NCBI GenBank assembly: GCA_964247055.1
Contig: OZ176055.1
Location: 3,720,001 to 3,784,000 of the forward strand
Direction of reading: 5' to 3'
DNA from: Paragordius varius
Lineage: Eukaryota; Animalia; Nematomorpha
Length of the DNA stretch: 64,000 nucleotides
Shown here: in pieces, positions 3,851-44,044 of the stretch
Layout: every line of letters begins with the position of its first letter
How positions within the stretch are numbered: position 1 is the first letter of the stretch
Translations under genes and position numbers: made by a program
Notes under the pieces: model-generated
What the model saw: the letters and a program-made list of their open reading frames with translations, nothing else
Told to the model about the DNA's origin: nothing
Databases searched by the model: none

Positions 3851-5121
3851 ATGCACATTTCTTCATAATTTCTGAATTATTATATATTAAAAAAATTATA
3901 TTATTTGTGTAGGCATACTTTGCTAGTTTTCATATATAGCCAGATATAAAGCAAAGGGAATCAATTGATCTATAGTTATTTTTTAGCTTTTTACTGCTAT
4001 TAGCCAATAATATTCTTTAGTTTAAAATATATCCATAATATCCCCTTGTTTAATTAATGTAAAAATTAATCATGATTGAATACAGTTAACATGTATGATA
4101 TACATTTTTAATCATACCAAATTAAATTGTGGAGTTAAAATACATGTTTGCAATGAAATATTATGTTTTGATATAACAAGTTTCATTAGAAAATAACATA
4201 AATTTAATCAATTAAAAATCCTTGTTTTGTTTCCATTATTGTTTTATCCAGTAGTGTATGTTAAAAATTGTTGATAAAATACAGGCATAAAACAATGTTA
4301 TTTCATAAAAGAATAACAAAAATGTTTTTCTATGGATATGTGTACACACACTACATATATATGCTACTGTAAAGTCTTAAAACATACGGGAAAATCGTTT
4401 GATTTCAACCATCTATTGGTTGTTACCATAAGCCATTGTAAATATTTAAACCCCTTTTAATATATTTTTATCCAGTAGCGTAGAGTATAAGAATGCATGT
4501 CCATAATTTAATAAACAAAATATATGGTAAAACATAGAAAAAAATTGTTCGGTTTAAATCATTGTTTGTTACCATACGTTACTTATCAAGGAACTTATTT
4601 TACGGCATCCACATCATTTTATTTACCAACCTATAAGTAAATATTAATTATGGCTAACTTGCAAACAACGCCTATGTCTTTTCCCTAAACACTTTTATAA
4701 TAATTAATATAGAAAATATATGCTAAAAGACATATAATTTTAATCTCCCTTTAGGCCTAATTTACAGTCCATCCCTGTGATATTATTATAATATAAAAAA
4801 GCTAATTAAGTATATCCATCCTTACAATTTTTAACCAATCCATTTACGGAAAGACATGATATGTTGTTAAATATGATAGATTGTATATACATATTGATTC
4901 TAAGTATATATGCGCCCCCTATAGTTATATTATCCGATAAAAAACAGATATGTATATAATGATTAATAAATTGAGTGTAATTACATAAAAATATCTTTAT
5001 GATAGGAAAATTTTGGACATATATAACACCGTAATTAATTAAATATTGAAAGATTTTATAATTGGCCACTAGTGTGAGAATAAAAAATGAATTAATATAA
5101 AGCTGCGGTATTCCTACAAAA

Positions 5122-5138
5122 ATACTTACCTGGCGCGG
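5122..5138 (+). ncRNA. RNU1: U1 snRNA 5' end (nt 1-17), interrupted by retrotransposon insertion
   Basis: ATACTTACCTGGCGCGG is the canonical U1 5' end including the 5'-splice-site-pairing ACUUACCUG. GCGC (nt 12-15) is complementary to the GCGC before the Sm site in the 3' fragment at 9244-9387 (U1 closing helix). Confidence 0.85.
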
Positions 5139-8100
5139 AGCTCTGCCCAAATTTTATTTGATTTTCTGCCTCGCTTTTCAACTTTTTTTACCTTTTTTTG
5201 TTTAACCCTACACATTTCCTCTCAATCCAACTATTTAATCTCTTACAATTTTTTTAACATAATCCAAATTTATTTACCTATATTATGCCAAATGATCATT
5301 CGTCAGATGAGGAGGATAGCCTCAAACTGATAATTGATGAGGAACACTTCCCAAGATTACCCTTTAAGGCGTCTGAATCAACAGCAACCTCCACTCACAC
5401 ACATCACGATATTGGTCTACCACACGAAATTAGCCAACCAGAATCCATTAAAACACCCCATTCCCTAACACATAATCTATCCACAATATATTATAGTTCG
5501 ACGATCAACACAATAGCGGGATCTATGCCACCTACAATCTACACTACCTCAACTACTACGACTAGACCCGGTTTTGAAGCCGCTGCAATGTTCTTTGACG
5601 ATCAACCTTGCGATGACCACTCCTCCTCCGCACTACAGAACATAACCAACATACGTGCCAACAAACGCAAGGCCACGATAGACACATACAATACTAAAAT
5701 TAACAAAACTAATACGTCCATACTAGCTAACAACCCTTTAATGTTATTAAATCAACCTACACTAGATGACAACACCCTCACGTTTTATTTCCCAGTGCCA
5801 AATCATTTCAACTGCCCGCTAGTAACTTGCAAAGAAATATACCGAGGCAGATATTGGACGGCTCAAAAAAGATCGCTACTTCATCACTTAGCCAGAAAAC
5901 ATAATCTATTTCCAAGAATTATAAACCGCTGTTCCCCATGTAACATAATAATAGGAAGCTCTCCAAGCGATCACATTAGATACTGTGAAAACTGGCGAGC
6001 AAATCCACCAATGATTGAGTTCCCGTTTAAATGTCAGATATGTCAAATGTCCTTCCCCAAGAAATCAAACCTAACAGCCCACATGAGACTGCACGCAATC
6101 AAAACAAACCCTATTCCTAAAAAAGTGTCATACTACGACCTAAACTTCGACCCAACCATCAAACAACCGTTACAATTAAACCCGCCTCTTTCAAGCGTAA
6201 CTGTTATCCCCACCTCTGAAACCCAACTCACACAAGACGCATCCTTAGCTCTCCACCCTGACGTCCCTACCAGCAACAGATTCTCGGCACTCGTCAATCT
6301 TAACGACTTTGAAAATTCTCTAGATTATAATAATAATAATGTGACAAAACCAATAAAGTCCCAACAATCTAACAAGAACAACAACACTAATTCTAATACA
6401 CAAACAAATTATCCCCCATCACTGGACCAGCCGATCCCCAACAACAGGAGCTTACTAAAACTTGACTCCAACGCACTAATACAAAAAATCTGCGAAATTC
6501 ATAACACCCCAGATGAATGGAATAATTTTGAAACAATCTTAGCCGAAATAACGATACCATGTCCAGACCCTTCATCACATCCCCGCGGAGATATTCCCCG
6601 CAAACCTAACTACATACAGAACGTCTATAAGTTTAACCGCAAGAAAGCCATCCGACTAATCGTAGAAGGACCCCCCAAATACTGCAATATCGACAGTGAA
6701 ACGATTGAAAATTATTACATAAACAAAATTGGTAACACTCCGCCACTGGTTTTAGAACCAGTCACATTTGAGGGAGAAGAATTATTCGAGCTAGAGCCAT
6801 TTTCTCATTGTGAAATAAAAAAGAAATTATACAAGATGAATAACTCGTCCCCTGGTAATGATGGTATCACTTACAACACGTGGAAAAGATTAGACCCACA
6901 CTGCCTCCTCCTGGAGAAAATTTTCAACACGTGCATCAAATTTGGCAAGATCCCCTCGCATTGGAAAACCACAAAATCTATTCTAATCCCAAAGAAAAAT
7001 TCTGACCTTTCTATTATCAAAAACTGGCGTCCAATAGCCTTGTGCAACACAATATATAAAATATTTACGGCATTATTATCGGATAGAATCAATAATTACG
7101 CAAAACTTAACAACATATTTGACCCAGCACAGAAAGGTTTTATGCCATACGACGGATGCCTAGAACATAACTTCACAATCAGTTCCCGCATAAGGCATAG
7201 TAAAACACATAAAACACCTCTATTTATAACATGGCTGGACATCTCGGCCGCCTTTGATTCTGTTCCTCACAAATGTATTTCCGACTGCCTCCAGAAAATT
7301 GGCCTTAGTAGTAGTTTTACCAACCTTATCAGCGATATCTATAAAAACGCTGCTACCTCTTTCATGACTGGCAATGGTCACACCAAGCTAATAAATTTCA
7401 ACTCTGGCATCAAACAAGGGTGCCCACTATCCGGCACCCTGTTCAACCTCGTCATCAATGACACCCTGAAGTTCCTTAGATTAGACGGCCACGATGCGTT
7501 AGCATACGCTGACGACATATGCCTGATATCGATAGAACACCACAATCACCAACGCGCCATAAATTCAGTACAACAGTCACTGAGCAAGATTGGACTTCTT
7601 CTTAACCCACAAAAGTGTAATTCGCTCATCAGCCACAGCGATCAGACCCCATTCATAATAGACAGCTTGCCAATCAACATAATAAATGAAGCCGACACAA
7701 TCAATTTCCTTGGCAACCCAGTCGGCCTCCACTTTTACAAACAAATCCCTAACTGCGAATTAGTCGATAAAATCCAACAATCCAGTCTGAATCCCGCTCA
7801 AAAACTTGACGCAATAAAAACATTTTTCTACCCTACCCTTACACACATGCTCAGGCATAACCAGCTTAATTATAATATTAGCAACACAATCGATTACAAA
7901 ATATGTAAAGCAGTAAAACAAATCCTCGCAATCCCAAAAAGTGCGGCCAATAGTTACCTATTTGGTTCTCGCAGCAAAGGAGCATTAGGGCTTCCATTAA
8001 CAAAAGATGACATGAACATCTTCCGGATTGACTCGGCCTTCAAATTACTAACCAGCAACGACGAAGTGGTCCGGAACACCGCTGTTCATGAACTAAGTAA

Positions 8101-9243
8101 AACCGCAGGTAAGAGATTCAAACTCAACTCTCCGTCACATAGCGAGCTTGCTTCATTTCTATCAGGGGACAACCCACCCGACTCCATCAACAGAAACAAT
8201 GGGTTCGACAATGTATGGACCAAAGCCCGAATGGCTTCCAGAAGCCTCAAGGTCAGTTGGTCACTCGACCCAACGCCCTCAGTAGCGTTTAACAACATTA
8301 CAATCGATATAAAGAATCGACACAATGTAGTATCGCTCCTGCGCAAGTGGAAAAGAGATCATATCGACCGTGATCTTGAACACACGGCCTCGCAAGGAAA
8401 GGTGATGCAGTGTGTCGCACAACACAAAGCATCACATTTCTTCCTATACAACTTCCGAAACCTAAGATACAGGGACTGGAAGTTCATACACAAAGCAAGG
8501 CTTAACCTCCTACCCACAAAAAGCCAAAGGTTTGCCAATTCATATGATCGAAACTGCCGGAGATGCAACGAGCCCAACGAATCCACAGGCCATATTCTTG
8601 GGTTCTGTGCCAACAGCAGCCGCTTAATTAACTTGCGGCACGATAATATAGTACGTCACATCAAAGAAAACCTCCCATCCAATGCACGACTCATAGCCGA
8701 AAATCAAGCACTGGACTCGTCAAGACTTCGACCCGACCTTGTAGTGGCAGTTGGCAACAAGTGCATCATCATCGATCCAACTGTTACCTACGAGAACGGG
8801 CCTAACGCCCTAGACGAAGCACACAATATTAAGATAGAGAAGTATCGTCACCTCACAGTCTCACTTTCCGGCCAATTTGACGAGGTGTACATCATCCCAA
8901 TCGTCGTGGGCGCACTTGGGTCATGGCATTACAAAAATGAACGACTATTTGAAAATATAAACATGAAAAATAAGTCCGAGATGAGAAAGGATATAGTTAT
9001 CGACACTATTAAATTCTCCTCTGACATATTCTTTGAATTCACTAGTGGGAGAAACTATATCCCCTCTCTCTCGGAGACACCTACCTCCAACTTCATCCGG
9101 TCCAACAGCGAACCCGAAACACAATAATTGTCAATATTCCTATTTCTATATTTAATTCTAATGTGATCCTATATTTATATTTTTTTCAGCATTGTTTTTC
9201 TATATCCATTACATATATTTTTTTTACTAAAATAAATAAATAC
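5139..9243 (+). mobile_element. Full-length RLE-type non-LTR retrotransposon (NeSL/Utopia/R2-like), subfamily A, inserted in U1 snRNA
   Basis: It has a ~146-nt pyrimidine/AT-rich 5' UTR, a single long ORF, and a ~116-nt AT-rich 3' UTR ending AAATAAATAAATAC. It is flanked exactly by the two parts of U1. No TSD is visible. Confidence 0.93.
5285..9127 (+). CDS. Retrotransposon polyprotein: N-terminal zinc fingers, reverse transcriptase, CCHC knuckle, PD-(D/E)xK restriction-like endonuclease
   Basis: 1280 aa, uninterrupted. Zinc fingers: CPLVTC..HLARKH, CSPC..HIRYC, FKCQICQMSFPKKSNLTAHMRLH. RT motifs: SPGNDG, NWRPIALC, QKGF, DISAAFDSV, GIKQGCPLSG, AYADD. CCHC: CRRCNEPNESTGHILGFC. RLE: RHDNIV, LRPDLVV, IIDPTV..KIEKY. 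Confidence 0.96.
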   Translation: MPNDHSSDEEDSLKLIIDEEHFPRLPFKASESTATSTHTHHDIGLPHEISQPESIKTPHSLTHNLSTIYYSSTINTIAGSMPPTIYTTSTTTTRPGFEAAAMFFDDQPCDDHSSSALQNITNIRANKRKATIDTYNTKINKTNTSILANNPLMLLNQPTLDDNTLTFYFPVPNHFNCPLVTCKEIYRGRYWTAQKRSLLHHLARKHNLFPRIINRCSPCNIIIGSSPSDHIRYCENWRANPPMIEFPFKCQICQMSFPKKSNLTAHMRLHAIKTNPIPKKVSYYDLNFDPTIKQPLQLNPPLSSVTVIPTSETQLTQDASLALHPDVPTSNRFSALVNLNDFENSLDYNNNNVTKPIKSQQSNKNNNTNSNTQTNYPPSLDQPIPNNRSLLKLDSNALIQKICEIHNTPDEWNNFETILAEITIPCPDPSSHPRGDIPRKPNYIQNVYKFNRKKAIRLIVEGPPKYCNIDSETIENYYINKIGNTPPLVLEPVTFEGEELFELEPFSHCEIKKKLYKMNNSSPGNDGITYNTWKRLDPHCLLLEKIFNTCIKFGKIPSHWKTTKSILIPKKNSDLSIIKNWRPIALCNTIYKIFTALLSDRINNYAKLNNIFDPAQKGFMPYDGCLEHNFTISSRIRHSKTHKTPLFITWLDISAAFDSVPHKCISDCLQKIGLSSSFTNLISDIYKNAATSFMTGNGHTKLINFNSGIKQGCPLSGTLFNLVINDTLKFLRLDGHDALAYADDICLISIEHHNHQRAINSVQQSLSKIGLLLNPQKCNSLISHSDQTPFIIDSLPINIINEADTINFLGNPVGLHFYKQIPNCELVDKIQQSSLNPAQKLDAIKTFFYPTLTHMLRHNQLNYNISNTIDYKICKAVKQILAIPKSAANSYLFGSRSKGALGLPLTKDDMNIFRIDSAFKLLTSNDEVVRNTAVHELSKTAGKRFKLNSPSHSELASFLSGDNPPDSINRNNGFDNVWTKARMASRSLKVSWSLDPTPSVAFNNITIDIKNRHNVVSLLRKWKRDHIDRDLEHTASQGKVMQCVAQHKASHFFLYNFRNLRYRDWKFIHKARLNLLPTKSQRFANSYDRNCRRCNEPNESTGHILGFCANSSRLINLRHDNIVRHIKENLPSNARLIAENQALDSSRLRPDLVVAVGNKCIIIDPTVTYENGPNALDEAHNIKIEKYRHLTVSLSGQFDEVYIIPIVVGALGSWHYKNERLFENINMKNKSEMRKDIVIDTIKFSSDIFFEFTSGRNYIPSLSETPTSNFIRSNSEPETQ

Positions 9244-9387
9244 CAATCGTGATCATGAAGGCGATTGCCCTAGTTTGAGACGTGTCCATTGCACCTCGGC
9301 CACGTTGAAGACTACGATTGCCCCAAATGGGGGCAAGCCGAGCGCATAATTTCTGGTTGCTGGGCTCTGCGTACGCGCAGAAGCCCT
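9244..9387 (+). ncRNA. RNU1: U1 snRNA 3' part (nt ~19 to end), copy 1
   Basis: Stem-loop I CAATCGT-GATCATGAAG-GCGATTG (U1-70K loop), U1A loop CCATTGCAC, stem III GATTGCCCCAAATGGGGCAAGC, Sm site ATAATTTCTGG, and terminal hairpin GGGCTCTGCGTACGCGCAGAAGCCC. Order and spacing match metazoan U1. Confidence 0.95.
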
Positions 9388-9468
9388 TATATTTCTAATT
9401 GAAAATATAACTTCTCCATTCATTTCGTCCAAAATCTGGCGTTTAGTTCGGATAATTAACTTTAAAAA
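9388..9468 (+). repeat. U1 downstream flank shared by three U1 copies (also 13775-13950 and 16039-16210)
   Basis: Near-identical block TGAAAATATAACTTCTCCATTCATT..GTCCAAGATCTGGCGTTTAGTTCGGATAATTAACTTTAAAAA follows all three + strand U1 3' parts. Confidence 0.9.
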
Positions 9469-9512
9469 CCTTCATGATCACGATTTATTTTTTTTCATTA
9501 AAATAAAAATAT
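9469..9512 (-). repeat. Inverted stub: subfamily-A 3' tail joined to U1 nt ~20-38
   Basis: Reverse complement reads ..TATTTTTATTTTAATGAAAAAAAATA|AATCGTGATCATGAAGG. Confidence 0.75.
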
Positions 9513-9514
9513 AC

Positions 9515-12500
9515 ACGTAATCGATGCGTCCTATGAAGATATTCCCAGACTAATAATTGACAAGGAACACTTCCCCAGTTTACCATGCCACGCGTCAAGT
9601 TCAACTGCTGCCTCTAATTCATTTTCCATCCCACATGTTACCCATGTCATTCTACCGTCTCCCAGTCAGATTACATCGTCCTTATCATCCTATCTTTTAT
9701 CACTCAACATAACTTTAATACATTCTAGTCCAGTTATCAACACAATCGCTTCATCATCTCCAAGCTGTACCACTTCATCAACAATAAGTAGACCTGGTTT
9801 TGAAGCTGCTGCAGTCTTTGATAATCCACCCTGCCAAGACCTCACTAATGAGTGTTTGAATATACCAAGCAATATCAAGAAGTCCAATCCCGCTACACCA
9901 CTCGCACACTCGACAAAAAAAATACACCAAAACTGTGAACCCGGCATTTGGCAAACACCCTACTTTAGTAAATAATAATCTCACCTTTTTTTTCCAGTGG
10001 CAAACCATTTTGTTTGCCCTTACTATGACTGCTTGATGTCCAGCCGCTGCTCAATCTGGACATCACGGAAGTTGTCCCTGATCAGACACCTGAAGGAAAA
10101 GGACAATTGTACCCCAACAGTCACTCACAGATGCTATCCATGCAATGTGGATATTGGGCCAAGCCCTAGTTCACACCTGCCATCCTGCCCCCATTGGGAC
10201 AGCCCCATACCTTTAAAAAGTTTTTTCTACAAATGCTCTAAATGCTCCCTATCGTTCCAGAGGGCTTCAAGCCTACGTAAGCACGAAAGATCCCATGACC
10301 CGCCTCGTAATCCAATTACCAAAACTAAATCATTACTTGATCTGAAATTCCATTCCAATCTAACACACCGCAACACTAATAGCAATAATAATAACGAGGA
10401 CTCAGATGACCTTGTTCAGTCTGACTTCTATAATCCTTCCACACCTCACATTGATCTAAGTAATCGATTCAACATCCTGACCTCGATCGAGTCTGAGTCT
10501 CCCACTACCTCCTCAAACTGGAACATTGGAGATGATAATTCTGCTTCTACCTCCAAACCCTTGAGTAAGAGGAAAAAGGCTGTAAACCAATCCAACATCA
10601 ATCCAAACAAAAAGTCTAATTTTAACCCTATTGATATCACTATCTCATCACTAAATCCACCCTCAGCTGATCCAATTAGCTCCTCACCGAACCTCAAACT
10701 CTAAGCTCGCTCCTCCATAAGCTTACCTTATTTCATTTGGATAATTGGGAAGAAATTAATACATTCGTATCAGAATTAAATGACTTCTTGCATCCATGAC
10801 ACCCATTCAACCCAAGAACACAAACCAGTCCCAGCAAATTTTATTCCCCAAATACATCCAAAAAATATATCATTTCAACAGGAGAAGAGCCATCCGGCTA
10901 ATTACCCAAGGTCCACCAACCTACTGCACCGCCCCGATTGCCGAGATAGAACAACACTTCCAATGCCTATACAATAATACCCTTCCAGCACCATTCATTA
11001 ATAATGATTCTGATTCCCCTCCAATGATGCCGGATATCTCTTTTACTTGTACAGAGGTGTCCGATAAACTTGGGAAAATGGAAAACAGTTAACCAGGACC
11101 TGATGGTATAAGCTACAGGGACCTTAAAAATAAGGATCCTAAAGCTCTTATTCACTAGGCTATTTGATCTCTGTCTCCAACACAGGAAGATTCCCACTTG
11201 AACCACTCCACCACCATTTTAATCCATAAACATGGTGATAAAGCCAGTTTAAAAAATTGGCGACCTATCGCCCTCACCAGTTGCCTGTATCGGCAGTTTG
11301 CAGCCCTAGTCGCCAATAAAATAAGTCAGCATCTCATAAAAAACCAACTTCTAGATCCCCGTCAAAAGGGCTTCCTCCCCCATGACGGGTGCTTTGAGCT
11401 CAATTACATCATAAAACAAACTTGATCTCTTCAAAAAAAGAAAAAACAAGCTCATGTCACGTGCATTGACATTTCAAATGCGTTTGACAAAATCCCGCAC
11501 CCGATCATCCTAAACAACCTGAAAAGGGTAGGTGTATCGGATGGCATCATATCCCTCATTGCAAACTCTCTCTCACTGGTAAAAAACATCTATACGTGCC
11601 GGTAATGAGATCACTTCTCCGATAAACCTTAACAGGGGCATCAAACAAGGTTGCCCCCTCTCAGGGCTCCTGTTTATAATTGGTTTGAATGAGATCATGA
11701 AGCGGGCCTCCAATAATGGGATTGATTTTTATGCATATGCTGATGACATCATATGCAAATTGAACATCAAAGCAACATCAACTTTATTGTTAACGAACTG
11801 AATCTGATTCATCTTAATGTCAATCCTGAAAAATGCTCAAACATCAACGTCAACAGCGATTCCAGATTTTTGATAAATAATATAAGGATCCCCAATCGTG
11901 GGGTCCACCAAACGATAAAATACCTGGGAAACCCAATAGGGTTGTTCCCAACCATCCCACTACCTGATGTCGAATTAGCCGACAAAATTGCCAAATCAAA
12001 TCTCGCTCCTTGGCAAAAGTTGGATGCTATCAAAAGCTCCTACTACCCCACCTTAACATATTACCTCCGTTTAAATCAATTTAATTACGCTACAAGTGAC
12101 AAACTTGAAAGGCAGCTGTTAAGTATGTTACAATACTAGAGCTCCCAAAAGATGCTACTAACAATTGCATCTTTGCATCGAGGAGTAAGGGAGCCCTGGG
12201 CATCCAGCAGATAAAGTGTGATTTCAACATCTTTAAAATTTATGCTGCTTTTAAACTGCTTCATTCAAATGACCCAATGGTCAAAAAATATGCCCAGGAT
12301 GAACTCAATACTACAATAAAAAAAAGGTAGAGACTTACCACGTCTCCATCCCCTGCAATTATGCAATTATCTCTCCGGCAAGGAAGAGGATGCGAATGGC
12401 CATATCAATTACGCGAATGTATGGTCACTTGCTCGCAAGTCCTCAATCTCACTGGGTGGACCTGGGTCCCCCTAGGTGACTCTTCCTTCGCCATTCAGTT

Positions 12501-13630
12501 CCATCATTGATAGTCCCTGATCTAAAAAATTCTCTTGTCCACCTTCTCCGGAATGCAATAAGAGGTGAGAAGGACCGGAATTTCCAACACCTTGCAAACC
12601 AAGGAAGGTTTATGGAATGTGTCGCCTTGGATAAGTCTTCCCATTCCTTCTTATTCTCAGGCAAAAACCTGAGGTGGAGATTTATTTATAGGGCCAGACT
12701 CAAACTTCTCCCTCTTAACAGCAAACCGGGAAGGTTTGACGATACATCTTGCAGAAGGTGCAAGAACCGGATCGAATCTGAATCTCATGTAATAAATTAC
12801 TGCGTGTTAGACACAGGTATTGTCACCGAGCGCCACAACAAAGTGGTCGATTACATTAAATCTATATTACCCAAAAAATTCTCTATTATATCTGAAAATC
12901 TAAAGGTTGATGACTCAAACCTACGTCCCGACCTAGTGATAACTGATAATACAAATTGTTACATTATCGACCCCACAATCTTCTATGAGAACAGAGTTTT
13001 ATCTTTGGACGATGCATTTAACACAAAGCTCACAAAATACGATCATTTGATTTGCTCCTTCTCTGAAAAATACTCTAAAGTTGAGATTATCTCAGTGGTG
13101 ATAGGCGCTCTAGGCTCATGGTACCCCCGAAATGACAAACTTTTGAATGCACTTGGGATAAAAAACCCTAACCGTATCAAACAAGACCTCATTGCGGAAG
13201 TACTAAAATTTTCATGTGACATCTACCACCTTTTCATCAGTAGTCGGAACATCCAACCGCCAAGTGTGACTCCCATAGTCGACCCTTTCAACGAATAGCT
13301 TCCTTGCTCAAGTCAAATTAAATCTATCCATCGCATTTCATCCCCATTGTTACTCTTTATATTTTATTACATATAATTTATTAAAACATTCAGTTTTATA
13401 TTACAACAAAATATGTGATATGTTTTCTTTGCAATCTCCCATTCAAGCTTTGTCTTCTTTCCCCTATTATTATTATTTACATATATATCATTTTAAAATT
13501 CAAAATGAGTGTTAACTTTGCTACATATTATATATCCTATATGTATGATCCAGAAGTAATTCCTACCTTTGTCTTTCCTTTTACAGCAATGTATTTAAAA
13601 TATTTATATTATTTATTTAATAAATTGTAA
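9515..13630 (+). pseudogene. Near full-length, frameshifted RLE retrotransposon, diverged subfamily B, ending at a U1 3' part
   Basis: N-terminus LIIDKEHFPSLP is homologous to copy A. Zinc-finger ORF 9997-10704. RT fragments 10796-12139 (NWRPIAL, QKGF, GIKQGCPLSG, AYADD). CCHC+RLE ORF 12507-13298 (CRRCKNRIESESHVINYC, LRPDLVI, IIDPT). Its ~330-nt 3' UTR differs from that of A. Multiple stops and frameshifts. Confidence 0.92.
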
Positions 13631-13774
13631 CAATCGTGATCATGAAGGCGATTGCCCTAGTTTGAGACGTGTCCATTGCACCTCGGCCGCGTTGAAGACT
13701 ACGATTGCCCCAAATGGAAGCAAGCCGAGCGCATAATTTCTGGCTGCTGGGCTTTGCGTACGCGCAGAAGCCCT
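13631..13774 (+). ncRNA. RNU1: U1 snRNA 3' part (nt ~19 to end), copy 2
   Basis: Differs from 9244-9387 at only a few positions and starts at the same CAATCGTGATCATGAAGG. Confidence 0.95.
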
Positions 13775-13949
13775 TATATTTTCAATACAATTTATCAATT
13801 TCTCAAAAATAAAGGCGAATTGATATTAAAATTATATGTAATAGGTCATTGAAAATATAACCTCTCCATTCATTCCGTCCAAGATCTGGCGTTTAGTTCG
13901 GATAATTAACTTTAAAAAACAAAAGTAACACATATCAACCCGCAAACAA

Positions 13950-14905
13950 CCTTCATGATCACGATTTTTTATATTTATTTTGATAAAAATAAAAACATAA
14001 GGGTTACAAAACAATGCTAATAAGAAAATAAATAGGGGATCACATGGACATAATTTATATATTAATAAAAATTGAGCGTTATTGTGTTACGGATTCGCAG
14101 TAGGACCGTGGGATGAGGTTGGAGGTGGGTGTTTCCGGGAGGGAGGGGATATAGTTTCTACCACTGGTAAATTCAAAGAATCCAAGTGCGTACATGACGA
14201 TTATTGGCCGGAAGAAACTGTGAGGTGACGATTCTCTATTGTGTGCTTCGTCTAGGGCGTTGGGTCCGTTCTCGTAGCTGACAGTTAGATCGATGATAAT
14301 GCACTTATTGCCAACTGCACCACGAGATCGGGTGGAAGTCTTGACGAGTCCAGCGCTTGATTTTCGGATATTAGTCGTGCATTGGATGGGAGGTTTTGTT
14401 TGATGTGACGCACTATATTATCGTGTCATAAGTTAATTAATCGACTGCTGTTGGAGCAGAACCCAAGAATATGGCCTGTGGATTCGTTGGGCTCGTTGCA
14501 TCTCAGGCTGTTGCGATCATATAAATTGGCAAACCTTTAGCCTTTTGTGGGTAGGAGATAAGGCCTTGCTTTGTGTATGAACTCGGAAGTTGTATGGGAA
14601 GAAATGTGATGCTTTGTGTTGTGCGACACACTGCATTACCTTTCCTTGAAAGCCGGTGTGTTCGAGATCACCGTCGTTGTGATATCTTTTCCACTTTCGC
14701 AGGAGCGATACTGCATTTTATCGATTGTTTATATCGATTGTAATGTTGTTAAAAGCTATGGAAAGCGTTGGGTCGGGTGACCAACTGACCTTGAAGCTTT
14801 TGGAAGCCATTCGGGATTTGGTTCAAACGTTGTCAAACCCATTGTTTCTGTTGATGGAGTCGGGTGGGTTGTCCCCTGAATGATAGAAACGAAGCTAGCT
14901 CGCTA
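13950..14905 (-). mobile_element. Inverted 3' fragment of a subfamily-A-like element with U1 nt ~20-38 stub (13950-13966)
   Basis: Reverse complement matches ~8140-9120 of copy A with internal deletions, then a 3' UTR, then AATCGTGATCATGAAGG. Confidence 0.88.
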
Positions 14906-15955
14906 TCGTCGTGGGCGCACTTGGATCATGTCATTACAAAAACGAAAGATTATTGAAAACATTAATATGAAAAATAAGGCTGAGATGAGAACGGATATAG
15001 TCATCGACACCATTAAATTTTCGTCTGCTAGATTCTTTGAATTTACCAGTGGTAGAAAATATATCCCCTCTTTCCCGGAACCAGCGAAAATGGAAAAGAT
15101 ATCACAACGACGGGATCTCGAACACACCGCCTTTCAAGGAAAGGTAATGTAGTGTGTCGCACAACACAAAGCATCACATTTCTTCCCATACAACTTCCGA
15201 GTTCTTACACAAAGCAAGGCTTTATCTCCTACCCACAAAAAGCTAAAAGTTTGCCATTTATATGATCGCAACAGCTTGAGATGCAACGAGCCCAACGAAT
15301 CCACAGGCCATATTCTTGGGTTCTGCACCAACAGCAGTCGATTAATTAACTTATGACACGATAATATAGTGCGTCACATCAAACAAAACCTCCCGTCTAA
15401 TGCACGACTAATATCCGAAAATCAAGCGCTCTCGTCAAGATTTCGACCCGATCTCATAGGTGGCAGTTGCCAACAAGTGTATTATCATCGATCTAACTGT
15501 CACCTACGAGAACGGGGCCAACGCCCTAGACGAAGCACACAATATTAACAAGAAGTATCGTCACCTCACAGTCTCACTTTCTGGGCATTTGACGAGGGTT
15601 ACATCATCCAAATCGTCGTGGGCGAACTTGGATCATGGCACTACAAAAACGAAAGATTATTCGAAAACATTAATATGAAAAATAAGGCTGAGATGAGAAC
15701 GGATATAGTTATCGACACCATTAAATTTTCGTCTGATAGATTCTGTGAATTTACCAGTGATAAAAAATATATCCCCTCTTTCCCGGAAACACCCACCTCC
15801 AACCTCATCCCACGGTCCCACTGCGAATCCGTAACACAATAACGCTCAATTTTTATTAATATATCAATTCTGTTCATGTGATCCCTATTTATATTTTTAT
15901 TACCATTGTTTTTTTATAACCCTTATATTTTTATTTTTATCAAAATAAATACAAA
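14906..15955 (+). mobile_element. Rearranged 3' fragment of a subfamily-A-like element
   Basis: 14906-15075 matches ~8900-9075 of A. 15085-15840 matches ~8345-9125 (ORFs 15460-15678, 15618-15842). A 3' UTR follows, then U1. Confidence 0.88.
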
Positions 15956-16038
15956 AATCGTGATATGAAGGCGATTGCCCTAGTTTGAGAAGTGTCCATT
16001 GTTTCTGGTTGCTGGTCTCTGCGTACGCGCAGAGGCCC
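15956..16038 (+). pseudogene. RNU1: U1 snRNA 3' part with internal deletion, copy 3
   Basis: AATCGTGATATGAAGGCGATTGCCC..GTCCATTG is joined directly to TTTCTGGTTGC..GCGTACGCGCAGAGGCCC, so stems II/III are largely deleted. Confidence 0.85.
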
Positions 16039-16224
16039 TTATATTGTCAATACAATTTGTCAAAAATAAACGCCTTTAATTTATATAAAATTTAATCTAA
16101 TACATGTCATTGAAAATAACTTCTCCATTCATTCTGTCCAAGATCTGGCGTTTAGTTCGGATAATTAACTTTAAAAAAACAAAAGTAATACATAGCAACC
16201 CGCAAACAACCAACTCAATAATCC

Positions 16225-16700
16225 TCAGCGGAGAACAGATTAAAACCGTAAACATTTAACGTATTTAGGCAATATTATAAACAATGACAACAACTTAACT
16301 CCAGAAATAAAACGAAGAATTGCCATTGCAAAAGCAATTACATTCAAATACAACTAGATTTAGACATTACATGATATCAACCTAAAAAATCATGTTAATT
16401 AAGGCAACAATATTCCCCACATTACTATATGGGGGAAAGCTGGACGCTGAAAAAATATGACGAACGAATAATTTTCTTTCGAACTATAATGTTTGGAGGA
16501 AACTTCTCGAAACAAAATGGTCAGACAACTTTTCTAACTCAACCATTTTAAATAATATTAATCCTGAAATGTCACTGATGGGCAGCCTAATACACCAAAA
16601 ACTATCCTATTTTGGCCACATTATGAGATCTAAAAAATAAGTGGTCCTCGTAAATTATAAAGAAGAACTCGTTAGATGAATAACATCCTCAAAGAGACCA
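16225..16700 (+). mobile_element. RTE/BovB-like non-LTR retrotransposon 3' fragment
   Basis: Degraded peptides YLGNII..EIKRRIAIAK, IFPTLLYG.ESWTL and YFGHIMR are typical of the RTE-clade C-terminus. Confidence 0.7.
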
Positions 16701-16882: not shown

Positions 16883-16993
16883 CCTAACTCAGAGAAACCA
16901 AAAATTAGGCTTTGACCCCATTTAGGACAATCGCAGTCTCAAACGTGGCCGAGAGGACACGTGTCAAACCAGGTCGCCTTCATGATCATGATT
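16883..16993 (-). pseudogene. RNU1: Degenerate U1 3' part, copy 4
   Basis: Reverse complement AATCATGATCATGAAGGCGA..GGTTTGACACGTGTCC..CTCGGCCACGTT..GCGATTGTCCTAAATGGGG..TAATTTTTGG. Confidence 0.8.
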
Positions 16994-17940
16994 AAAAAAT
17001 TGAATATATGTTCATATGCCTATGTTGCTGTAAGAAAACCCAATAATAATTTAATTAATTATATCATATTCTAAATATTATGCATTAAAAACAATGCGAA
17101 TATACATGTGATTGTGTGATAGCACAATAATGTAAAAAAGAGGAAGGAAAACGGATAATTAAGAGTATAGGGTGGTTGTGAAATTACATTATACTCATAA
17201 GAAATATTTCTTCCACTAATAAACACGTACATATCACGCTTTGATAATGATAAGATATTATATAATTTTTGTCCGATTTTTTGTATCAAGCATATTTAAT
17301 ATTTTATACGAGCGGTATACCAGGATCCTAAAGCTTCTGTTTGTTATTTAACGTTTAACAAACGCTCAAAGTTTGCTATTTGCGTATACCTTATTATTTT
17401 GTTGTTAAAGGCATCTTCCTTAGATACTTATCCATCTTCATATGGTATGGTTGGATCTAATATAAAGCGGTTTTGGGTATCTGCTATAATTATAAGATCC
17501 GGTCTAAAGCTAGAAGCATTAACTGGTTGATTCTAAGAAATTATTTTAAATTTTGCGGGGACTATTGATATTTATTAACTACTATATTATGTTTCGTGAG
17601 AGGTTCGCTCGCATGGAAACAATAGTTGCTTGCATAAAAGCCGGTTTCATTCCTGTTGTTATTTAGTTTTTGGTTGCCTAAATGCCATTTAATGGTAGAA
17701 TATTTTTTGCTCGATAAATAAATCTCTAGTCATAAAATTTTAAATCTTGCTCATTAAATCGAAATTGATGGGATGTTATATCGAGGGCAACCTGTCGATT
17801 TGAGAGATGGTAAAATTATTTTTGTTTTCTTTTAACATAGCTCTTAGTTAGCTATATGCTTTAAATCAGCATTGGATAGAGAAGCATCTGTAAGATATCT
17901 TTAACAAGAAATAAATCGAGGGTTTTTTCCAAATTGAAAT
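16994..17940 (-). pseudogene. Degraded RLE element 3' end, subfamily C (B-like), abutting U1 copy 4
   Basis: Remnants RFIYRAK, FRPDLII, ILDPTIPYEDG, DAFNNK and ALGSWY. A further + strand piece of the same subfamily lies at ~17975-18165. Confidence 0.8.
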
Positions 17941-22446: not shown

Positions 22447-24426
22447 CACTGTGCAACAAATTTTATCCTTTTCTTTTAGACCAGAGTGAAAATTACGACA
22501 TCTTATAGAGAATTTTTTTCTGAAAATAATGATATATTTAATATTTTCCTAGCACTTTTTCACAAGCCGCTAAAAGGTTTCAAAAATCCAAAAACCATCA
22601 AAAATGCCTGTTTTTGTAACCCTATAACTTTTTGAATTATATAGCTTATTATCTTTTTTTGGGGGGATATTACAAATTATATTTTAAAATTCATGTAACA
22701 TTTTAAAATTTTTAAAAGTCTCTACTACTTTTTGATTTATTTGGAAAAAACGAAACTTAGCTCCAAAAAAATAGCGTTTCAAAACAATGAAAAATTAAGA
22801 GACATACTGGCATCATTTGATTGACAGCTTTTCATTATACATTACTAAAATAATAATATTTAATTGCTTTTTTATAAATATGAAAAATAGTATATATATT
22901 TAACACTTGGATACAACACACTCATTTTAGTCCTTCGATTCAAATTGGGGTAGTTGGATACCCCAGGCCTTTTTAAAAACAAATACTTTAAAAAGTATGG
23001 AAATATTCAAAACCATGGCAAAATTTTGCACTTATATAACATTTATAAACCGAAATATATAAAAAATTTTCAAAAATATTTGATATTACTTATTTTAAGC
23101 TAAACCCAAAGGTAAAAATTTCGTCAACGTGACATGTGTCAAATTGTAAAATTAAAAAATAATACAAAATAAACCGCTTTTCTATTTCAATCAATGTTAG
23201 ATGTAAATTATATAAAAAATTAGCTTTAGTTTTACCTTTAAAATCAAATGAAGACGATATTTTGCAAAAATTTTGTAAAAAAATGGCGTCGAAGTAGTTT
23301 AACTTTTTTTTCAAAACAAAATTTTATCAAGATATTTTGGCATATTTATATAATTTTTATCAAGATAGAAGCATAAATTTAAATTGGGACCGTTTCCTTC
23401 TGTATTTTTTAAAAATATTAATTTAAATTTAGTCTGGGGTATTTAGATACCCCAATTTGAATCGAAGTGTTGATGTTATAATAATAAATTTAATAAAATG
23501 ATAATATTTTTAAATTTATTAATGTTAATGGATAATAAACTCTGTGTTTGAATTAATATTATATGATTTTTAGTAATATTTCAATTATGTTATTATATAT
23601 TTTTGTTATTATTTTAAAGTAAATTTATTTATAAACTACTAAGATTTTAAAAAATTTAATACAGAAATGATTTAAAAATTATAAATATATTAAAATATTT
23701 TTAATTAAGACACAATATACGAATATATTTATTATGAAAGAAAAAAACAAATGAATGCCTTTTTTGCTCTGTTAGTTCAACATTTCAGTTTATATTTATT
23801 TGCATGTTTATATTTTTTTGTTGAAAAAAACTTTCGTATATTAAAAAACAAAATATCATGATTCATATAATCACGTACAATACATAATAAATAAATTTGC
23901 ATGTTTAAAAGTATTTCTTATTTATAAATAATATATATCAAATTAATATTATATATTTATTATTTTATTAATTATACTATAAATATACTAATTTATTCCT
24001 AAAATTAATATTTACATTTTTTAATTAAACATGAAATTTTTCCATTTTGTTATGTATAAAAAATGGTATGGTGCCTGCACGTCTCTTAATTTTTCATTGT
24101 TTTGAAACGCTATTTTTTTGGAGCTAAGTTTCGTTTTTTCTAAATAAATCAAAAAGTAGTAGAGACTTTTAAAAATTTTAAAATGTTACATGAATTTTAA
24201 AATATAATTTGTAATATCCTCCAAAAAATAAATAATAAGCTATAAAATTCAAAAAATTATAGGGTTACAAAAACAGGCATTTTTGATGGTTTTTGGATTT
24301 TTGAAACCTTTTAGCGGCTCGCGAAAAAGTGCTAGGAAAATATTAAATATATCATTATTTTCAGAAAAAAATTCTCTATAAGATGTAGTAATTTTCACTC
24401 TGGTCTAAAAATCGTGTTGCACAGTG
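22447..24426. mobile_element. MITE with ~350-bp TIRs (Tc1-like CACTG ends) containing a nested MITE
   Basis: CACTGTGCAAC...GTTGCACAGTG|TA. Arms 22474-22800 vs 24080-24411 are inverted repeats. Confidence 0.8.
22904..23469 (-). mobile_element. piggyBac-like MITE, copy 1 of 3
   Basis: TTAA|CACTTGGATACAA...TTGAATCGAAGTG|TTGA. Homologous over ~570 bp to 33888-34469 and 44045-44624, in the opposite orientation. Confidence 0.8.
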
Positions 24427-32405: not shown

Positions 32406-33887
32406 TTTTTAAATAATGTGAGTAGTGGTATTCAATCAATGATAAAATGATTGTTACCCTAATATTATAAAATAAATTATAAATATTAAAATATATTATA
32501 GCACCAACAATTAAAACCAGCATTATCAATTTTTTATATATGAATAATATTAAAATATTCGGTAATAGTATATAAATTTTTCATCTCTATAGTTTGTTAA
32601 TAAAATGTTTTTAAAAAACATCTCCTAGCAAAACTAAACAAGGATCAGATGATTAAAAGTTTTAAAATTTATATAATAATAGCTCTACAAAATTAATAGT
32701 TAAATGACATCATAATTTCTATCATTTAAAAATGTATATGTTACAGGGAAAATCTTTAATATTATTTTATTCCATATATATCTGCCTAAAATATTAAAAC
32801 GATTCACTTTGGGTTGGTAATTTTGATCTATTTTGGACTACATTTAGTTATTCCAATGAATAGATCATAAAATAAACCCGTCAAGGTGTACAAAATACTC
32901 CTTGAAATTGTATACATCTATTAAATATTAAATTCTTATACCATTTCATAATAAAGATATGTTTACAGAACTTTTCTAAATTTAAATTTAAAACCAATTA
33001 TGCATTTTTCAACATATTTCGATTTAATAACGGTCCGTCCAAAATAGGATATATAAAAAATACCCTGATGAAATATATATGGATAGAAAAATGTATCAGG
33101 ATTATCATGGTGTTTTTAGTTTTGGCCCTTACAAGTGATTTAAAATATTTACATAACTCACCCATATCAGAAAATGACAAAAATTCCGCACATTTTGTTA
33201 AATTATATTTTTTTGGTGAAAACTAAATGTTATTCCAAAAATACCATTAAATATATCATCATCTATATAGAATGGCAAAATATTTTTATGATTTATAAAG
33301 TTTTGGATGTGGGCTCCGAGAGTTACAACTTTTTCGCCATTAAAAAATGTACTTTTTCTTTAAAATAAACGCAAAAATGCCGAGATTTCGCGAGATTTTT
33401 TTATTTTCTTTAGATTATGACATTAAAAAAATTTTTTTTGGATAAATACTTTGTTCAAAAAAAATTTTAGCAGTATATTATTGAGGCCTACTTCATATTA
33501 TTTTGAAACATGATAACGATAGAAAAACCCTATATCATATTATAAATATAGATTTTTACGAAAATTTAGCGAAATTCGAAAGGAAGCAAACCTCTAATAT
33601 AAAATTTTGAGCCGATAATGTTTGGCATCTTTGGTTTATAGAAAAATATTTTAAGCAGCTTTGAACTATATAGATAAAGTTTAACTATATCAGAGTGTTG
33701 TTTTGACGCTTCAAATGAGCATAAACAATGATTCAACAAAATTTTGCTAAAAATTAAATTTTTGAACTAAATGCAAGATTTATTTGTTATTTTAAATGTA
33801 TGCTCTGAAAGTCTCATATTTTTAATAGCCTGAAACGGTTCTCTTAAAATAAACGAAAAATGCTGGTCTAACACCCTTACCAGTTGA

Positions 33888-34469
33888 CACTTCGATTTAA
33901 TTTGGGGTATATGAATACCCCAGACCAAATTTGAGTTAGGATTTTTTAAAAACTACTGAAGGAAACGGTCCCAATTTAAATCTATGCTTCTATCCTAATA
34001 AAAATTATATAAATATGCCACCAAAATATCTAAATAAAATTTTGTTTTGAAAAAAAAGTTCCATGTCAAACTACTTCGACGCCATTTTTATTTTACAAAA
34101 TTTTTGAAAAATATCGTCCTCATTTAATTTTAAGGGTATAATTAAAGCTATTTTTTTATTTAAATTACATCTAACATTGATATAAATAGAAAAAGCGGTT
34201 TATTCCGTAGTATTTTACAATTTTACCATTCCACACATGTCACGTTCACGAAATTTCTACCTCTCGGTTTTAGCTAAAAAGTAATATCAAGTATTTTTAA
34301 ATAATTTCTTTTATATGTTTCGGTTAATTACTGTTATATAAGTGCACAATTTTGTCATGGTTTCGATTCCTTCCAAATTTTTTAAAGAATTTAATTTTAA
34401 ACAGGCCTGGGGTATTTAACTACCCCAATTTGAATCGAAGGACTTAACTGAATCTGTTGTATCCAAGTG
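33888..34469 (+). mobile_element. piggyBac-like MITE, copy 2 of 3
   Basis: CACTTCGATT...TATCCAAGTG ends with degenerate TTAA flanks. Aligns with 44045-44624. Confidence 0.75.
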
Positions 34470-34949
34470 TGAATATAGTTATGTGGTAACTGCTCCATAT
34501 CAGAAACCGACAAAAGTTGCGCACGTTTTGGTAAATAAAACCTTTTCGGTGAAAGATGGATGCCTCATTTAAAAAATTTACTCCAAAAGTTGAGAATCCT
34601 GATACATTTAATTATAAGAATATATATTTTATTAGGATATTTTTTTATGACGCTGCGTAATTTATCTCAAAATTTTTATATAAAAAAGGAGCGCGATTAT
34701 GCCACAATCTATATTTTCTGCAATATAAGGTAAATATAAATTGTAAAGAATATTTTAAAAAAAGTTAAACGCCCAACCGATTTTTTAAAACATTTGTTTA
34801 TGATAAAAACATAGTCGTTTTGCCTATAGGATTTTTTTTAAAATGTTTCCAAACCAGTTGCTTATTGAAAAAAATGTAAGAGTGATTACCAATTTAAGTA
34901 AGAGAAGTCACAGCAAAAACGCAGGTGATTTATTTGACACGGTTGACAT

Positions 34950-43210: not shown

Positions 43211-44044
43211 TTGATAAAGTATAAAAATGATTGGTGAATGATATATTATAAGCTCCTTTTATACATTTTTTTGATAATGTGAAAGCCCATTTTAACAGCG
43301 TTTGTGATCTCTAAACCTAATTACCTATATTATTCCCTTTATTTCAAATCATATTTTAATTTTTCATACCCTTTACATAGTTTGATACACGTATCACTTA
43401 AAAATAATTTCATTGGGTATAAATAACCAATTTACACAGGTGTATGCGCCAAATTTAAATTTTAACATAATACAAAATCTAAAATAACCTTTAACAATTT
43501 GTATCAAGTTTTAAATTGTCGTCCCTTTAAATAGATATGTGAATTTATGTGACACACTCCATTTACCTATTTATTATATGGGTATAAGAAAATTTAATTA
43601 TATATCAAATAATCAGTTTCATCCATATTTTTCAGTTTATATGCTACATATAAAAATTCTCATGATTTAAAATGGACTGCATCTGATTTTTAATTTTAAG
43701 TCTTTTCTTTATAATAATTATTTTTTCGGGATAAAAAACGGAATGTATTTGTATTCATGATAATAATTGATTTTGCTAAGTCAATTTTGAACAACATTGA
43801 ATTATGAAAATTTTAGAATGCTTGATTAAGGAATCGAATAAGGGACACAAATAATATAATACTTTTTTTAAAATTATGACATTCTGTACCAATTTAAGGT
43901 ATATTAGTTATTTTTATCAGGGAAGTTGGACAAATATATTTTCATTTCAAAGCTGATCCCTTTAAGGGTTAATTTATTAAAAATTTAAAGGATCCTTTGT
44001 TCACCGCATTAGTGCAATTATCCATTTTTAAACCCTTTTATTAA

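What the first reader, a model, noticed from the sequence alone, without database searches (positions are those of the whole stretch)
5122..9387. Intact RLE non-LTR retrotransposon inserted precisely inside a U1 snRNA gene: candidate new U1-targeting family
Seen: U1 nt 1-17 (ATACTTACCTGGCGCGG) | 4.1-kb element with an intact ZF-RT-CCHC-RLE ORF | CAATCGTGATCATGAAGG...complete U1 3' part. Joining the flanks rebuilds a U1 gene. Stem I predicts GGGCAATCGT pairing with GCGATTGCCC, so about 1 nt appears lost and there is no TSD, as for R2-type integration. Established: RLE elements are often sequence-specific (R2/R4/R5 rDNA, NeSL and CRE/SLACS spliced-leader genes, Utopia U2 snRNA). U1 is known as a target of Dada DNA transposons. 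Inference: this is a NeSL/Utopia-like lineage with U1 specificity. I do not recall one being described, but I cannot search databases.
Basis: partly seen in the sequence, partly recalled or inferred. Interest (0 to 1): 0.95.

Follow-up and report, generated by a model that had tools for sequence, protein, structure and literature searches.

The report
Retrotransposon that targets U1 snRNA genes
An intact, recently active jumping gene of the R2/Utopia type sits exactly inside a U1 splicing-RNA gene, and many older relatives in this genome cut U1 at the same spot, so this lineage homes to U1 genes, a target I found no report of for this class.

Summary
U1 nt 1-17 lies at 5122-5138. A 4,104-bp element follows at 5139-9242, with one intact 1280-aa ORF (three N-terminal zinc fingers, RT with YADD, CCHC, PD..D..K restriction-like endonuclease). 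U1 resumes at 9243-9388.

A contig in public run X1 carries the empty site: the two flanks joined with only GG between them. The insertion is therefore precise, has no target-site duplication, and deleted 2 nt.

Target specificity is supported. At least 14 more copies, from at least four diverged subfamilies, join three different U1 sequence variants within a 3-nt window (U1 nt 19-22). They lie in this window and in a second U1 cluster 3.1 Mb away.

The closest relatives, inside and outside this genome, sit in U2 genes at one shared position, which I take to be the Utopia site. The U1 elements are nested among them. This is a target switch within the Utopia/NeSL group, not a new class.

The window's own subfamily is leakier. 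Two 99.7%-identical, 5'-truncated copies lie off target, and one carries a short U1 tag.

Full-text searches found no U1-specific non-LTR element. Repbase and Dfam could not be checked. Expression is untested.

First-stage notes of this scan (s1-257454, s1-313169) flagged the same family at the other U1 cluster of this genome.

The parts
5122..5138 (+). U1 snRNA gene, nt 1-17 (5' splice-site-pairing arm), left flank of the insertion
   Evidence: Exact unique match. Aligns to the 5' ends of the four intact U1 genes of the genome. The empty-site contig continues from 5138.
5139..9242 (+). Full-length RLE-type non-LTR retrotransposon, 4,104 bp, subfamily A of the U1-targeting group
   Evidence: Boundaries are set by the empty-site joint 5138->9243, which skips 4104 nt. 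A contig of run X6 starts the element at 5139 behind a different flank (table 7).
5139..5284 (+). 5' UTR, pyrimidine-rich, with no detectable ribozyme or stable fold
   Evidence: No Rfam match at E<=1 apart from U1. Fold z-score 0.03. The motif CTCTG(C/T)CCAAATTTTAT is shared with the other full-length copy at C6:575 kb.
5285..9127 (+). Single intact ORF, 1280 aa
   Evidence: It is the only full-length open copy of the U1 group found in the genome (open frame 1289 aa).
5813..6094 (+). Three N-terminal zinc fingers (aa 177-206 CCHH, 216-234 CCHC, 250-270 C2H2); presumed target-DNA binding
   Evidence: Motif scan. Pfam zf-C2H2. The scaffold is conserved in U1- and U2-targeting relatives, but the residues differ.
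6986..7714 (+). Reverse transcriptase domain with YADD at 7505-7516
   Evidence: Pfam RVT_1, E 3.6e-38. Aligned to R2 RT structures.
8555..8608 (+). C-terminal CCHC zinc knuckle (CRRC...H....C)
   Evidence: Aligned to the CCHC of an R2 protein, 9nl3_A.
8729..8845 (+). Restriction-like endonuclease core (RPD ... IIDPT ... KIEKY)
   Evidence: Aligned to KPD...VVDVT...KVRKY of R2, 9nl3_A.
9128..9242 (+). 3' UTR ending in ...AAATAAATAAATA; no poly(A) and no stable fold
   Evidence: The same end occurs in the C4 and C8 copies.
9243..9388 (+). U1 snRNA gene, nt 20 to the 3' end (stem-loops I-IV and Sm site), right flank
   Evidence: Rfam RF00003, 74.4 bits. Alignment to intact U1 genes. Empty-site contig.
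9487..13630 (+). Older, degenerate copy of subfamily B (35-55% aa identity in pieces, with stops and frameshifts), ending ...AATAAATTGTAA
   Evidence: tblastn pieces 9535-13259; sequence; 3' tail.
13631..13775 (+). Second U1 3' part, starting at CAATCGTG directly behind the subfamily-B tail
   Evidence: Rfam 70.1 bits; junction.
14890..15955 (+). 3' fragment of a subfamily-A relative (63-67% aa identity)
15956..16040 (+). Third U1 3' remnant, starting AATCGTG, with an internal deletion
16893..17562 (-). Minus-strand U1 3' part (16893-16993), joined at the same U1 position to an element fragment (17206-17562)
13950..14894 (-). Inverted 3' fragment of a subfamily-A relative. Its tail is followed by a 17-nt U1 tag (AATCGTGATCATGAAGG, 13950-13966) and then non-U1 DNA. 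A paralogous remnant of the tag lies at 9469-9485.
   Evidence: (I25).

Best explanation
This is a full-length, coding-intact RLE-type non-LTR retrotransposon. It belongs to a host-specific radiation of Utopia-like elements that integrates sequence-specifically into U1 snRNA genes at the 5' base of stem-loop I. Shown: the anatomy, the precise insertion with a 2-nt deletion and no duplication, the recurrence of the same junction in many diverged copies, and the U2-targeting relatives. Inferred, by analogy with R2: the N-terminal zinc fingers, possibly with other parts of the protein, bind conserved U1 DNA blocks. These blocks are ACTTACYTGGCGC upstream and GATCA(A/T)GAAGG downstream of the cut. 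The bases at the cut itself differ between the U1 variants that were hit. The endonuclease then nicks the bottom strand at about nt 19-21. The freed 3' OH primes reverse transcription from the A/T-rich 3' end of the element RNA. The top strand is cut 2 nt upstream, after nt 17. Donor RNAs probably read through into the downstream U1 sequence, because off-target copies carry a 10-17-nt U1 tag behind the tail. Transcription may start at the U1 promoter that remains upstream, or within the 146-nt 5' UTR; this is open.
For: Anatomy and motifs. Empty-site contig with GG between the flanks. The filled 5' junction is seen in two studies. Seventeen U1 3' junctions were inspected; 11 lie in the C6:560-640 kb cluster and 4 of those in the window are cleanly placed. 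All of these start U1 within nt 20-22, directly behind element tails, across U1 variants reading CCATCGCG, TTTCTCCG and CAATCGTG. Of the 17 U1 loci that Rfam detects, 4 are intact; the others whose junctions were read begin at that position. Only six U1 5' ends exist genome-wide: four intact genes plus two genes that each hold a full-length element. The second full-length copy (C6:575 kb, about 38% aa identity) has U1 through nt 22 on its left and U1 from nt 22 on its right. 3' ends of subfamilies B-D are found almost only in the two U1 clusters, with one off-target event present in three duplicated copies. Young age: the C8 and C4 copies are 99.7% identical. Phylogeny: all elements of this genome form one clade (100/100) beside arthropod elements that lie in U2 arrays. 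Own-genome families with U2 flanks branch at the base and inside the clade.
Against: Subfamily A, the window's own, is not strict. Of about 8 insertion events with a readable 3' end, 2 are in U1, 2 carry only a U1 tag, and 4 have no U1 flank (C8, C3:5.20 Mb, C6:8.43 Mb, and the C7 array of 11 duplicated copies). Some U1 junctions in the clusters may be segmental duplicates rather than separate events. I count at least 6-8 independent combinations of element subfamily and U1 variant, not 14. No RNA run holds the element, so transcription and current activity are not shown. The empty-site contig could come from an unassembled paralog rather than the other allele; it also differs by 1 nt at 5110. 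Nick sites, TPRT and DNA binding are inferred, not measured.
Confidence: 0.85

Rival explanations
1. One or a few chance insertions into a U1 gene were later multiplied by tandem or segmental duplication of the U1 cluster. There is no real target specificity.
For: The region is clearly duplicated. The unit of U1 3' part plus about 70 nt of downstream flank occurs three times in the window (D6, D10, D13). The C7 array shows that a single insertion can be amplified 11-fold.
Against: The junction recurs in subfamilies that are only 35-50% identical in protein. It recurs on three U1 variants whose sequence at the junction differs, in both orientations, with different 5' truncation points, and in two clusters 3.1 Mb apart. 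A young polymorphic insertion hits the same spot again.
Confidence: 0.05
2. It is a U2-specific Utopia element that mis-integrated into U1; the true target of the family is U2.
For: The nearest intact relative in the genome (50% aa identity over RT-RLE) and the nearest foreign relatives lie in U2 genes.
Against: No copy of subfamilies A-D was found next to U2, and no U2 match occurs in the window or in the C6 U1 cluster pieces scanned. The elements with U2 flanks form separate, well-supported clades.
Confidence: 0.03
3. Subfamily A is a weakly specific or non-specific element that prefers AT-rich DNA. Its presence in U1 is inherited from specific ancestors, or reflects retention because U1 arrays tolerate insertions.
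For: Half of the subfamily-A events lie off target, including both other young copies.
Against: The only full-length young copy made a precise hit at the ancestral site with a 2-nt deletion. At least one off-target copy carries a U1 tag, which shows its donor sat in U1. Off-target copies are 5'-truncated. The Utopia paper reports graded specificity among families (PMC4640811).
Confidence: 0.1

Closest known systems
Utopia (U2 snRNA gene-specific RLE non-LTR retrotransposons, NeSL clade; Kojima & Jurka 2015, PMC4640811)
   Same: Single ORF with N-terminal zinc fingers, RT, and C-terminal ZF + RLE. Precise 3' junction, variable 5' junction, and no TSD in arthropod families. Targets a multicopy spliceosomal snRNA gene. 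Specificity varies in strength between families. The closest relatives by sequence lie in U2 arrays, and this genome holds intact copies with U2 flanks that are 50% identical.
   Different: The target is U1 (nt 17-22, base of stem-loop I), not U2 (nt 38/39 by the Rfam U2 model). The name-giving feature is therefore not met.
R2 (28S rDNA-specific RLE non-LTR retrotransposon; solved structures 8gh6, 9nl3, 9dou)
   Same: Domain order ZF-RT-CCHC-RLE. RT and RLE align at E 1e-36 to 1e-69. From my memory of R2Bm biochemistry, R2 also makes a small target deletion with no TSD because the top strand is cut 2 bp upstream.
   Different: Different target. No Myb motif was found by Pfam. No HDV-like ribozyme or structured UTR was detected. 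It belongs to a different RT clade: relatives with Ulp1 (NeSL-type) and relatives in U2 genes are closer.
NeSL-1 (spliced-leader gene-specific, nematodes)
   Same: Same broad clade. Nematode proteins with the Ulp1 protease domain appear among the hits at 29-31% identity.
   Different: No Ulp1 protease domain. The target is U1, not SL1.
Dada-U1 (DNA transposons in zebrafish U1 genes; PMC3706591)
   Same: The only U1-gene-specific mobile elements I found in the literature.
   Different: They are DDE-type DNA transposons with 6-7 bp TSDs, inserted at a different U1 site (GCGAAT). The mechanism is unrelated.
Keno (U2-specific, APE-type Tx1 group)
   Same: A non-LTR element that targets an snRNA gene (mentioned in PMC3706591).
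   Different: It uses an APE endonuclease, belongs to a different clade, and targets U2.

Membership tests
RLE-type non-LTR retrotransposons (R2/NeSL/R4/CRE/HERO supergroup) | Single ORF with RT followed by a CCHC motif and a PD-(D/E)XK restriction-like endonuclease | tested here: met
   Pfam RVT_1. R2 structures align over RT and over CCHC + RLE, with RPD / D-x-T / K conserved.
RLE-type non-LTR retrotransposons (R2/NeSL/R4/CRE/HERO supergroup) | No LTRs or TIRs; 5' truncation of copies; insertion by TPRT with a fixed 3' end | tested here: met
   No terminal repeats appear among the repeats listed. The C8 and C4 copies are 5'-truncated at element nt 1264 and 1515 and share the 3' end. TPRT itself was not assayed.
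Utopia | RT phylogeny places the element within the Utopia/NeSL cluster | tested here: inconclusive
   The element is nested among elements with U2 flanks from spiders and from this genome, with 99-100 support. No curated Repbase Utopia, R5 or YURE references were available.
Utopia | Insertion at the specific site of U2 snRNA genes | tested here: not met
   Both flanks are U1. There is no U2 match in the window.
NeSL-1 | [quoted passage not shown] | tested here: not met
   No PF02902 hit. The target is U1.
R2 | Insertion in 28S rDNA; self-cleaving HDV-like ribozyme at the 5' end | tested here: not met
   The target is U1. There is no ribozyme family at E<=1 and no stable 5' fold.
Sequence-specific retrotransposon (general) | Independent copies share the same target sequence and the same junction | tested here: met
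   At least 14 junctions fall within a 3-nt window of U1, across three U1 variants and at least four subfamilies, plus an empty site. Subfamily A alone is only partly specific.

The most novel reading that the evidence does not exclude
A previously uncatalogued U1 snRNA gene-specific lineage arose from U2-specific Utopia ancestors within one animal lineage, reported by other agents of this scan to be a horsehair worm. It now coexists with intact U2-specific sisters that are about 50% identical in RT-RLE. The pair is a natural, closely matched system for working out how RLE retrotransposons are retargeted. It comes with a live-looking U1-specific protein and its exact empty target. In the same genome, most detectable U1 loci have been knocked out by the family.
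Probability: 0.55. Interest if true: 0.7.

Novelty: new variant of a known kind. Interest (0 to 1): 0.62.

Why it matters
Site-specific RLE retrotransposons such as R2 are being developed for programmable gene insertion, and how their target choice evolves is poorly understood. This genome holds sister families aimed at two different snRNA genes. They share the same domain scaffold, including the same three-finger N-terminus, and each has coding-intact copies and exactly known target sites. That makes domain-swap and footprinting experiments on retargeting straightforward.

For the host, the family has disrupted most detectable U1 loci. Only 4 of 17 are intact, and two of those four carry a changed 5' splice-site-reading base. 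This bears on U1 gene dosage and on snRNA variant evolution in a lineage that other agents report to have unusual introns.

If no catalogue entry exists, this adds U1 to the list of multicopy RNA genes used as safe havens by non-LTR elements.

Tried and rejected
- Ribozyme or structured UTRs: Rfam at E<=1 found only U1 in the whole window. The 5' UTR, the U1(1-17)+5' UTR chimera and the 3' UTR fold no better than shuffles (z 0.03, 0.09, 1.8). I found no evidence for R2-style self-cleavage.
- Expression: no RNA run holds the element, and the one 'RNA?' run that was laid gave only 19-20-nt scraps. No conclusion is possible.
- Monophyly of the U1-targeting copies: the best small tree groups them, but with support of 43/4.7. 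The larger quick tree gives a trichotomy with the U2f1 family. One origin is neither shown nor rejected. The 'careful' PMSF search did not finish in the time available.
- Shared DNA-reading residues: the zinc-finger region shows no residues shared by subfamilies A and B-D to the exclusion of U2f1. Identities are 43-50% against 37-43%. There is no clear determinant.
- A shared GATCAAG heptamer in U1 loop I and U2: I judged it compatible with chance (about 2 shared 7-mers are expected between two RNAs of this size) and did not use it.
- Foreign relatives in U1: five contigs of the closest foreign proteins were checked. Four show U2 pieces, one shows nothing, and none shows U1.
- The joined flanks could not be scored with the Rfam model, because the tool reads only stored sources. 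They were replaced by an alignment to intact paralogs and by the empty-site contig.
Full report
**1. What is there**

The window is G000:C6:3720001-3784000 of a 110.5-Mb, 44-contig eukaryotic assembly. Other agents of this scan concluded it is almost certainly a horsehair worm; I did not test that.

- At 5122-5138 lies ATACTTACCTGGCGCGG. It is unique in the window, with 0.03 matches expected by chance.
- From 5285 to 9127 runs one uninterrupted ORF of 1280 aa.
- Pfam finds RVT_1 (aa 568-810, E 3.6e-38) and a C2H2 finger (aa 248-270).
- Solved R2 proteins align over the RT and, as a second block, over aa 1021-1252 (E 1.7e-69 for 9nl3_A). In that block the CCHC knuckle (CRRC...H....C, aa 1091-1108) and the endonuclease residues line up with those of R2. 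The residues are RPD 1149-1151, IIDPT 1162-1166 and KIEKY 1183-1187.
- Three N-terminal fingers lie at aa 177-270, and the RT has YADD.
- Downstream, Rfam's U1 model scores 74.4 bits, above the gathering score, ending at 9388. The 5' third of that match is AT-rich element tail, and real U1 starts near 9243.

**2. The insertion is precise, and an empty site exists**

I laid the contigs of four public runs on 4900-9600. Run X1 gave one contig that joins 5138 directly to 9243. It skips 4104 nt and has the two letters GG in between (tables 5 and 5c).

- The uninterrupted gene therefore reads ...GGCGCGG-GG-CCAATCGTGATC.... This matches the intact paralogs of the genome (GGCGCGAGGGCCCATCGCGATC and others).
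- The element is exactly 5139-9242. No target-site duplication was made, and 2 nt (U1 nt 18-19) were lost.
- The filled 5' junction is covered without any difference by contigs from two studies (X1 5014-5346, X3 5014-5323). The join is therefore not an assembly artefact.
- The empty and filled contigs have similar depth in X1 (177 and 213). This fits a heterozygous or polymorphic insertion. However, the empty contig also lacks 1 nt at 5110 and could come from an unassembled paralog.
- A contig of a third organism label (X6) begins the element at the same first base, 5139, behind a different flank. This supports 5139 as the true 5' terminus.

**3. Is U1 a target or an accident?**

- A genome-wide Rfam search finds 17 U1 loci, of which 4 are intact (114-124 bits). 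The rest score lower. For those whose junctions I read, the low score arises because they begin at about nt 21.
- I fetched the second U1 cluster (C6:560-640 kb, 3.1 Mb upstream) and mapped it with tblastn and blastn. Eleven U1 copies there start at nt 21 or 22. In nine of them the start lies directly behind the 3' UTR of a diverged relative of the window's ORF (25-50% aa identity); the other two show the same tail at the junction, but the nearest mapped coding piece is not adjacent.
- The window itself holds several more such junctions (13631, 15956, 16993 on the minus strand, and older remnants).
- Four kinds of tail are seen: ...AAATAAATA, ...AATAAATTGTAA, ...AATAAATTTTAA and ...AATAAATTAAAA.
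- Three U1 variants were hit. At the junction they read CAATCGTG, CCATCGCG and TTTCTCCG.
- All junctions fall within a 3-nt window.
- Only six U1 5' ends exist in the genome. Four belong to the intact genes and two to genes that each hold a full-length element: this window's copy and one at C6:575 kb.
- The C6:575 kb copy is about 38% identical in protein and degenerate. It has U1 through nt 22 on its left and U1 from nt 22 on its right. Its 5' UTR shares the motif CTCTG(C/T)CCAAATTTTAT with the window's element.
- 3' ends of subfamilies B-D occur almost only in the two U1 clusters. The exception is one off-target site present in three duplicated copies.
- Some junctions may be duplicates of each other. 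Counting only distinct combinations of subfamily and U1 variant still gives at least 6-8 independent hits at one spot of a 165-nt gene.

**4. The window's own subfamily is young and less strict**

- Two other copies are 99.7% identical (C8:179941-182788 and C4:7793798-7796391). Both are 5'-truncated and lie in non-U1 DNA.
- The C4 copy carries TACCAATCGTGA behind its tail. That is 10 nt of U1 starting exactly at the junction.
- An inverted subfamily-A fragment in the window carries 17 nt of U1 (nt 22-38) before non-U1 DNA (13950-13966). A paralogous remnant lies at 9469-9485.
- I read these tags as 3' read-through of donor transcripts from U1-resident copies. This is inference.
- Older subfamily-A relatives without U1 flanks exist at C6:8.43 Mb and C3:5.20 Mb. 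A further one is a single fragment amplified 11-fold in a roughly 20-kb tandem unit on C7.

**5. Relatives**

- The best foreign proteins are 36-38% identical, from spiders, ticks and crayfish. Nematode proteins with a Ulp1 protease (NeSL type) are more distant.
- The contig of the best hit, from a spider, is a U2 array with the element between U2 pieces. Three further contigs carry U2 fragments, one of them starting at U2 model position 39 right behind the element.
- In this genome, five intact copies of a family 50% identical over RT-RLE (U2f1) lie immediately upstream of U2 3' parts that resume at AUCUGUUCUUAUCAG. So do copies of a second group at 35-37% identity (U2f2/f3). This is the same U2 position as in the spider contig, and I take it to be the Utopia site (PMC4640811).
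- Maximum-likelihood trees of the RT-RLE region put all elements of this genome in one clade (100/100), beside the arthropod elements with U2 flanks.
- Inside that clade U2f2/f3 branch first. Three well-supported groups then meet in an unresolved node: subfamily A, U2f1, and subfamilies B-D.
- The best small tree unites the U1 groups, but with support of only 43/4.7. A single U2-to-U1 switch is compatible with the data but not shown.
- Degenerate copies entered the tree as tblastn translations with X at every break.

**6. Mechanism (inferred)**

- The domain set and the junction geometry match R2-type target-primed reverse transcription. The geometry is a fixed 3' end, a variable or truncated 5' end, no duplication, and a 2-nt deletion.
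- The bases at the cut differ among the three U1 variants that were hit. The blocks ACTTACYTGGCGC (nt 3-15) and GATCA(A/T)GAAGG (loop I) are conserved. Recognition most likely uses those blocks, with cleavage at a fixed distance.
- The three-finger N-terminus is homologous in U1- and U2-targeting families, but the residues differ. No residue set specific to the U1 families stood out.
- No ribozyme or stable UTR fold was found. How the 5' end of the RNA is made is open. The U1 promoter region and a TATA-like box upstream are retained, so co-transcription is plausible.

**7. Novelty**

- Full-text searches for U1-specific non-LTR elements returned only three kinds of paper: Dada-U1 DNA transposons, the Utopia paper, and SINEs with snRNA-derived heads.
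- Repbase and Dfam were not available. I therefore rate this a new target specificity within a known kind, with moderate confidence that it is uncatalogued.
- First-stage notes of this scan flagged the same family at the other U1 cluster (s1-257454, s1-313169). I tested that cluster myself.

Noticed in passing
window 9469-9485 (-), 13950-13966 (-); G000:C4:7793786-7793797: Off-target or inverted copies of subfamily A carry a short U1 tag (10 or 17 nt, starting exactly at the U1 junction) between their tail and non-U1 DNA. This suggests that the donor RNA reads through into U1. The two in-window tags end at the same U1 base (nt 38) and probably stem from one event that was later duplicated.
   Followed up: partly
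G000 genome-wide; intact U1 at C6:604678-604842, C6:606254-606419, C3:864188-864352, C6:3718553-3718717: Only 4 of 17 detectable U1 loci are intact, and two of the four read ACTTACTTG (C9U) in the 5' splice-site-pairing arm. The others whose junctions were read begin at nt 20-22 behind retrotransposon tails. The U1 gene family is heavily parasitised.
   Followed up: partly
G000:C7:8515524-8735517: Eleven copies of a 3' fragment of a subfamily-A relative (78-84% DNA identity) share an identical non-U1 flank and are spaced about 20 kb apart. This is one insertion carried along in a large tandem duplication.
   Followed up: partly
G000:C5:12783669-12785942, C3:4529774-4532047, C6:8915-11188, C5:12729336-12731609, C3:405976-408249: At least four coding-intact copies (open frames 1276-1293 aa; the fifth copy listed, C3:405976, has one TGA within the matched stretch) of a Utopia-type family lie directly upstream of U2 3' parts that resume at AUCUGUUCUUAUCAG. 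A second family with U2 flanks lies at C3:291256, C8:7393 and C6:10104644.
   Followed up: partly
window 4900-9600, run X1 (table 1): Variant contigs laid on the element differ from it mostly by C>T on the coding strand (46 of about 150 variant places in X1, against 16 G>A). This asymmetric substitution pattern among paralogous copies is unexplained.
   Followed up: no
run X6, loose end before window 5139 (table 7): In a third organism label, a contig starts the element at the same first base behind ...GTAAATCGCGGGA, which is not the U1 5' arm. It is a full-length copy at another site or on a divergent target.
   Followed up: no
window 16212-16700: The 3' end of an unrelated non-LTR reverse transcriptase (translation ...LLYGGKLDAEKI..., SYFGHIMRSKK) abuts the downstream flank of the third U1 unit.
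   Followed up: no
window 22474-22816 / 24068-24410; 33884-34475 / 44041-44630: There is a 343-nt inverted repeat, 96% complementary, with arms 1.25 kb apart. There is also a set of direct repeats about 10.15 kb apart at 88-92% identity. Both are probably other mobile elements and were not examined.
   Followed up: no
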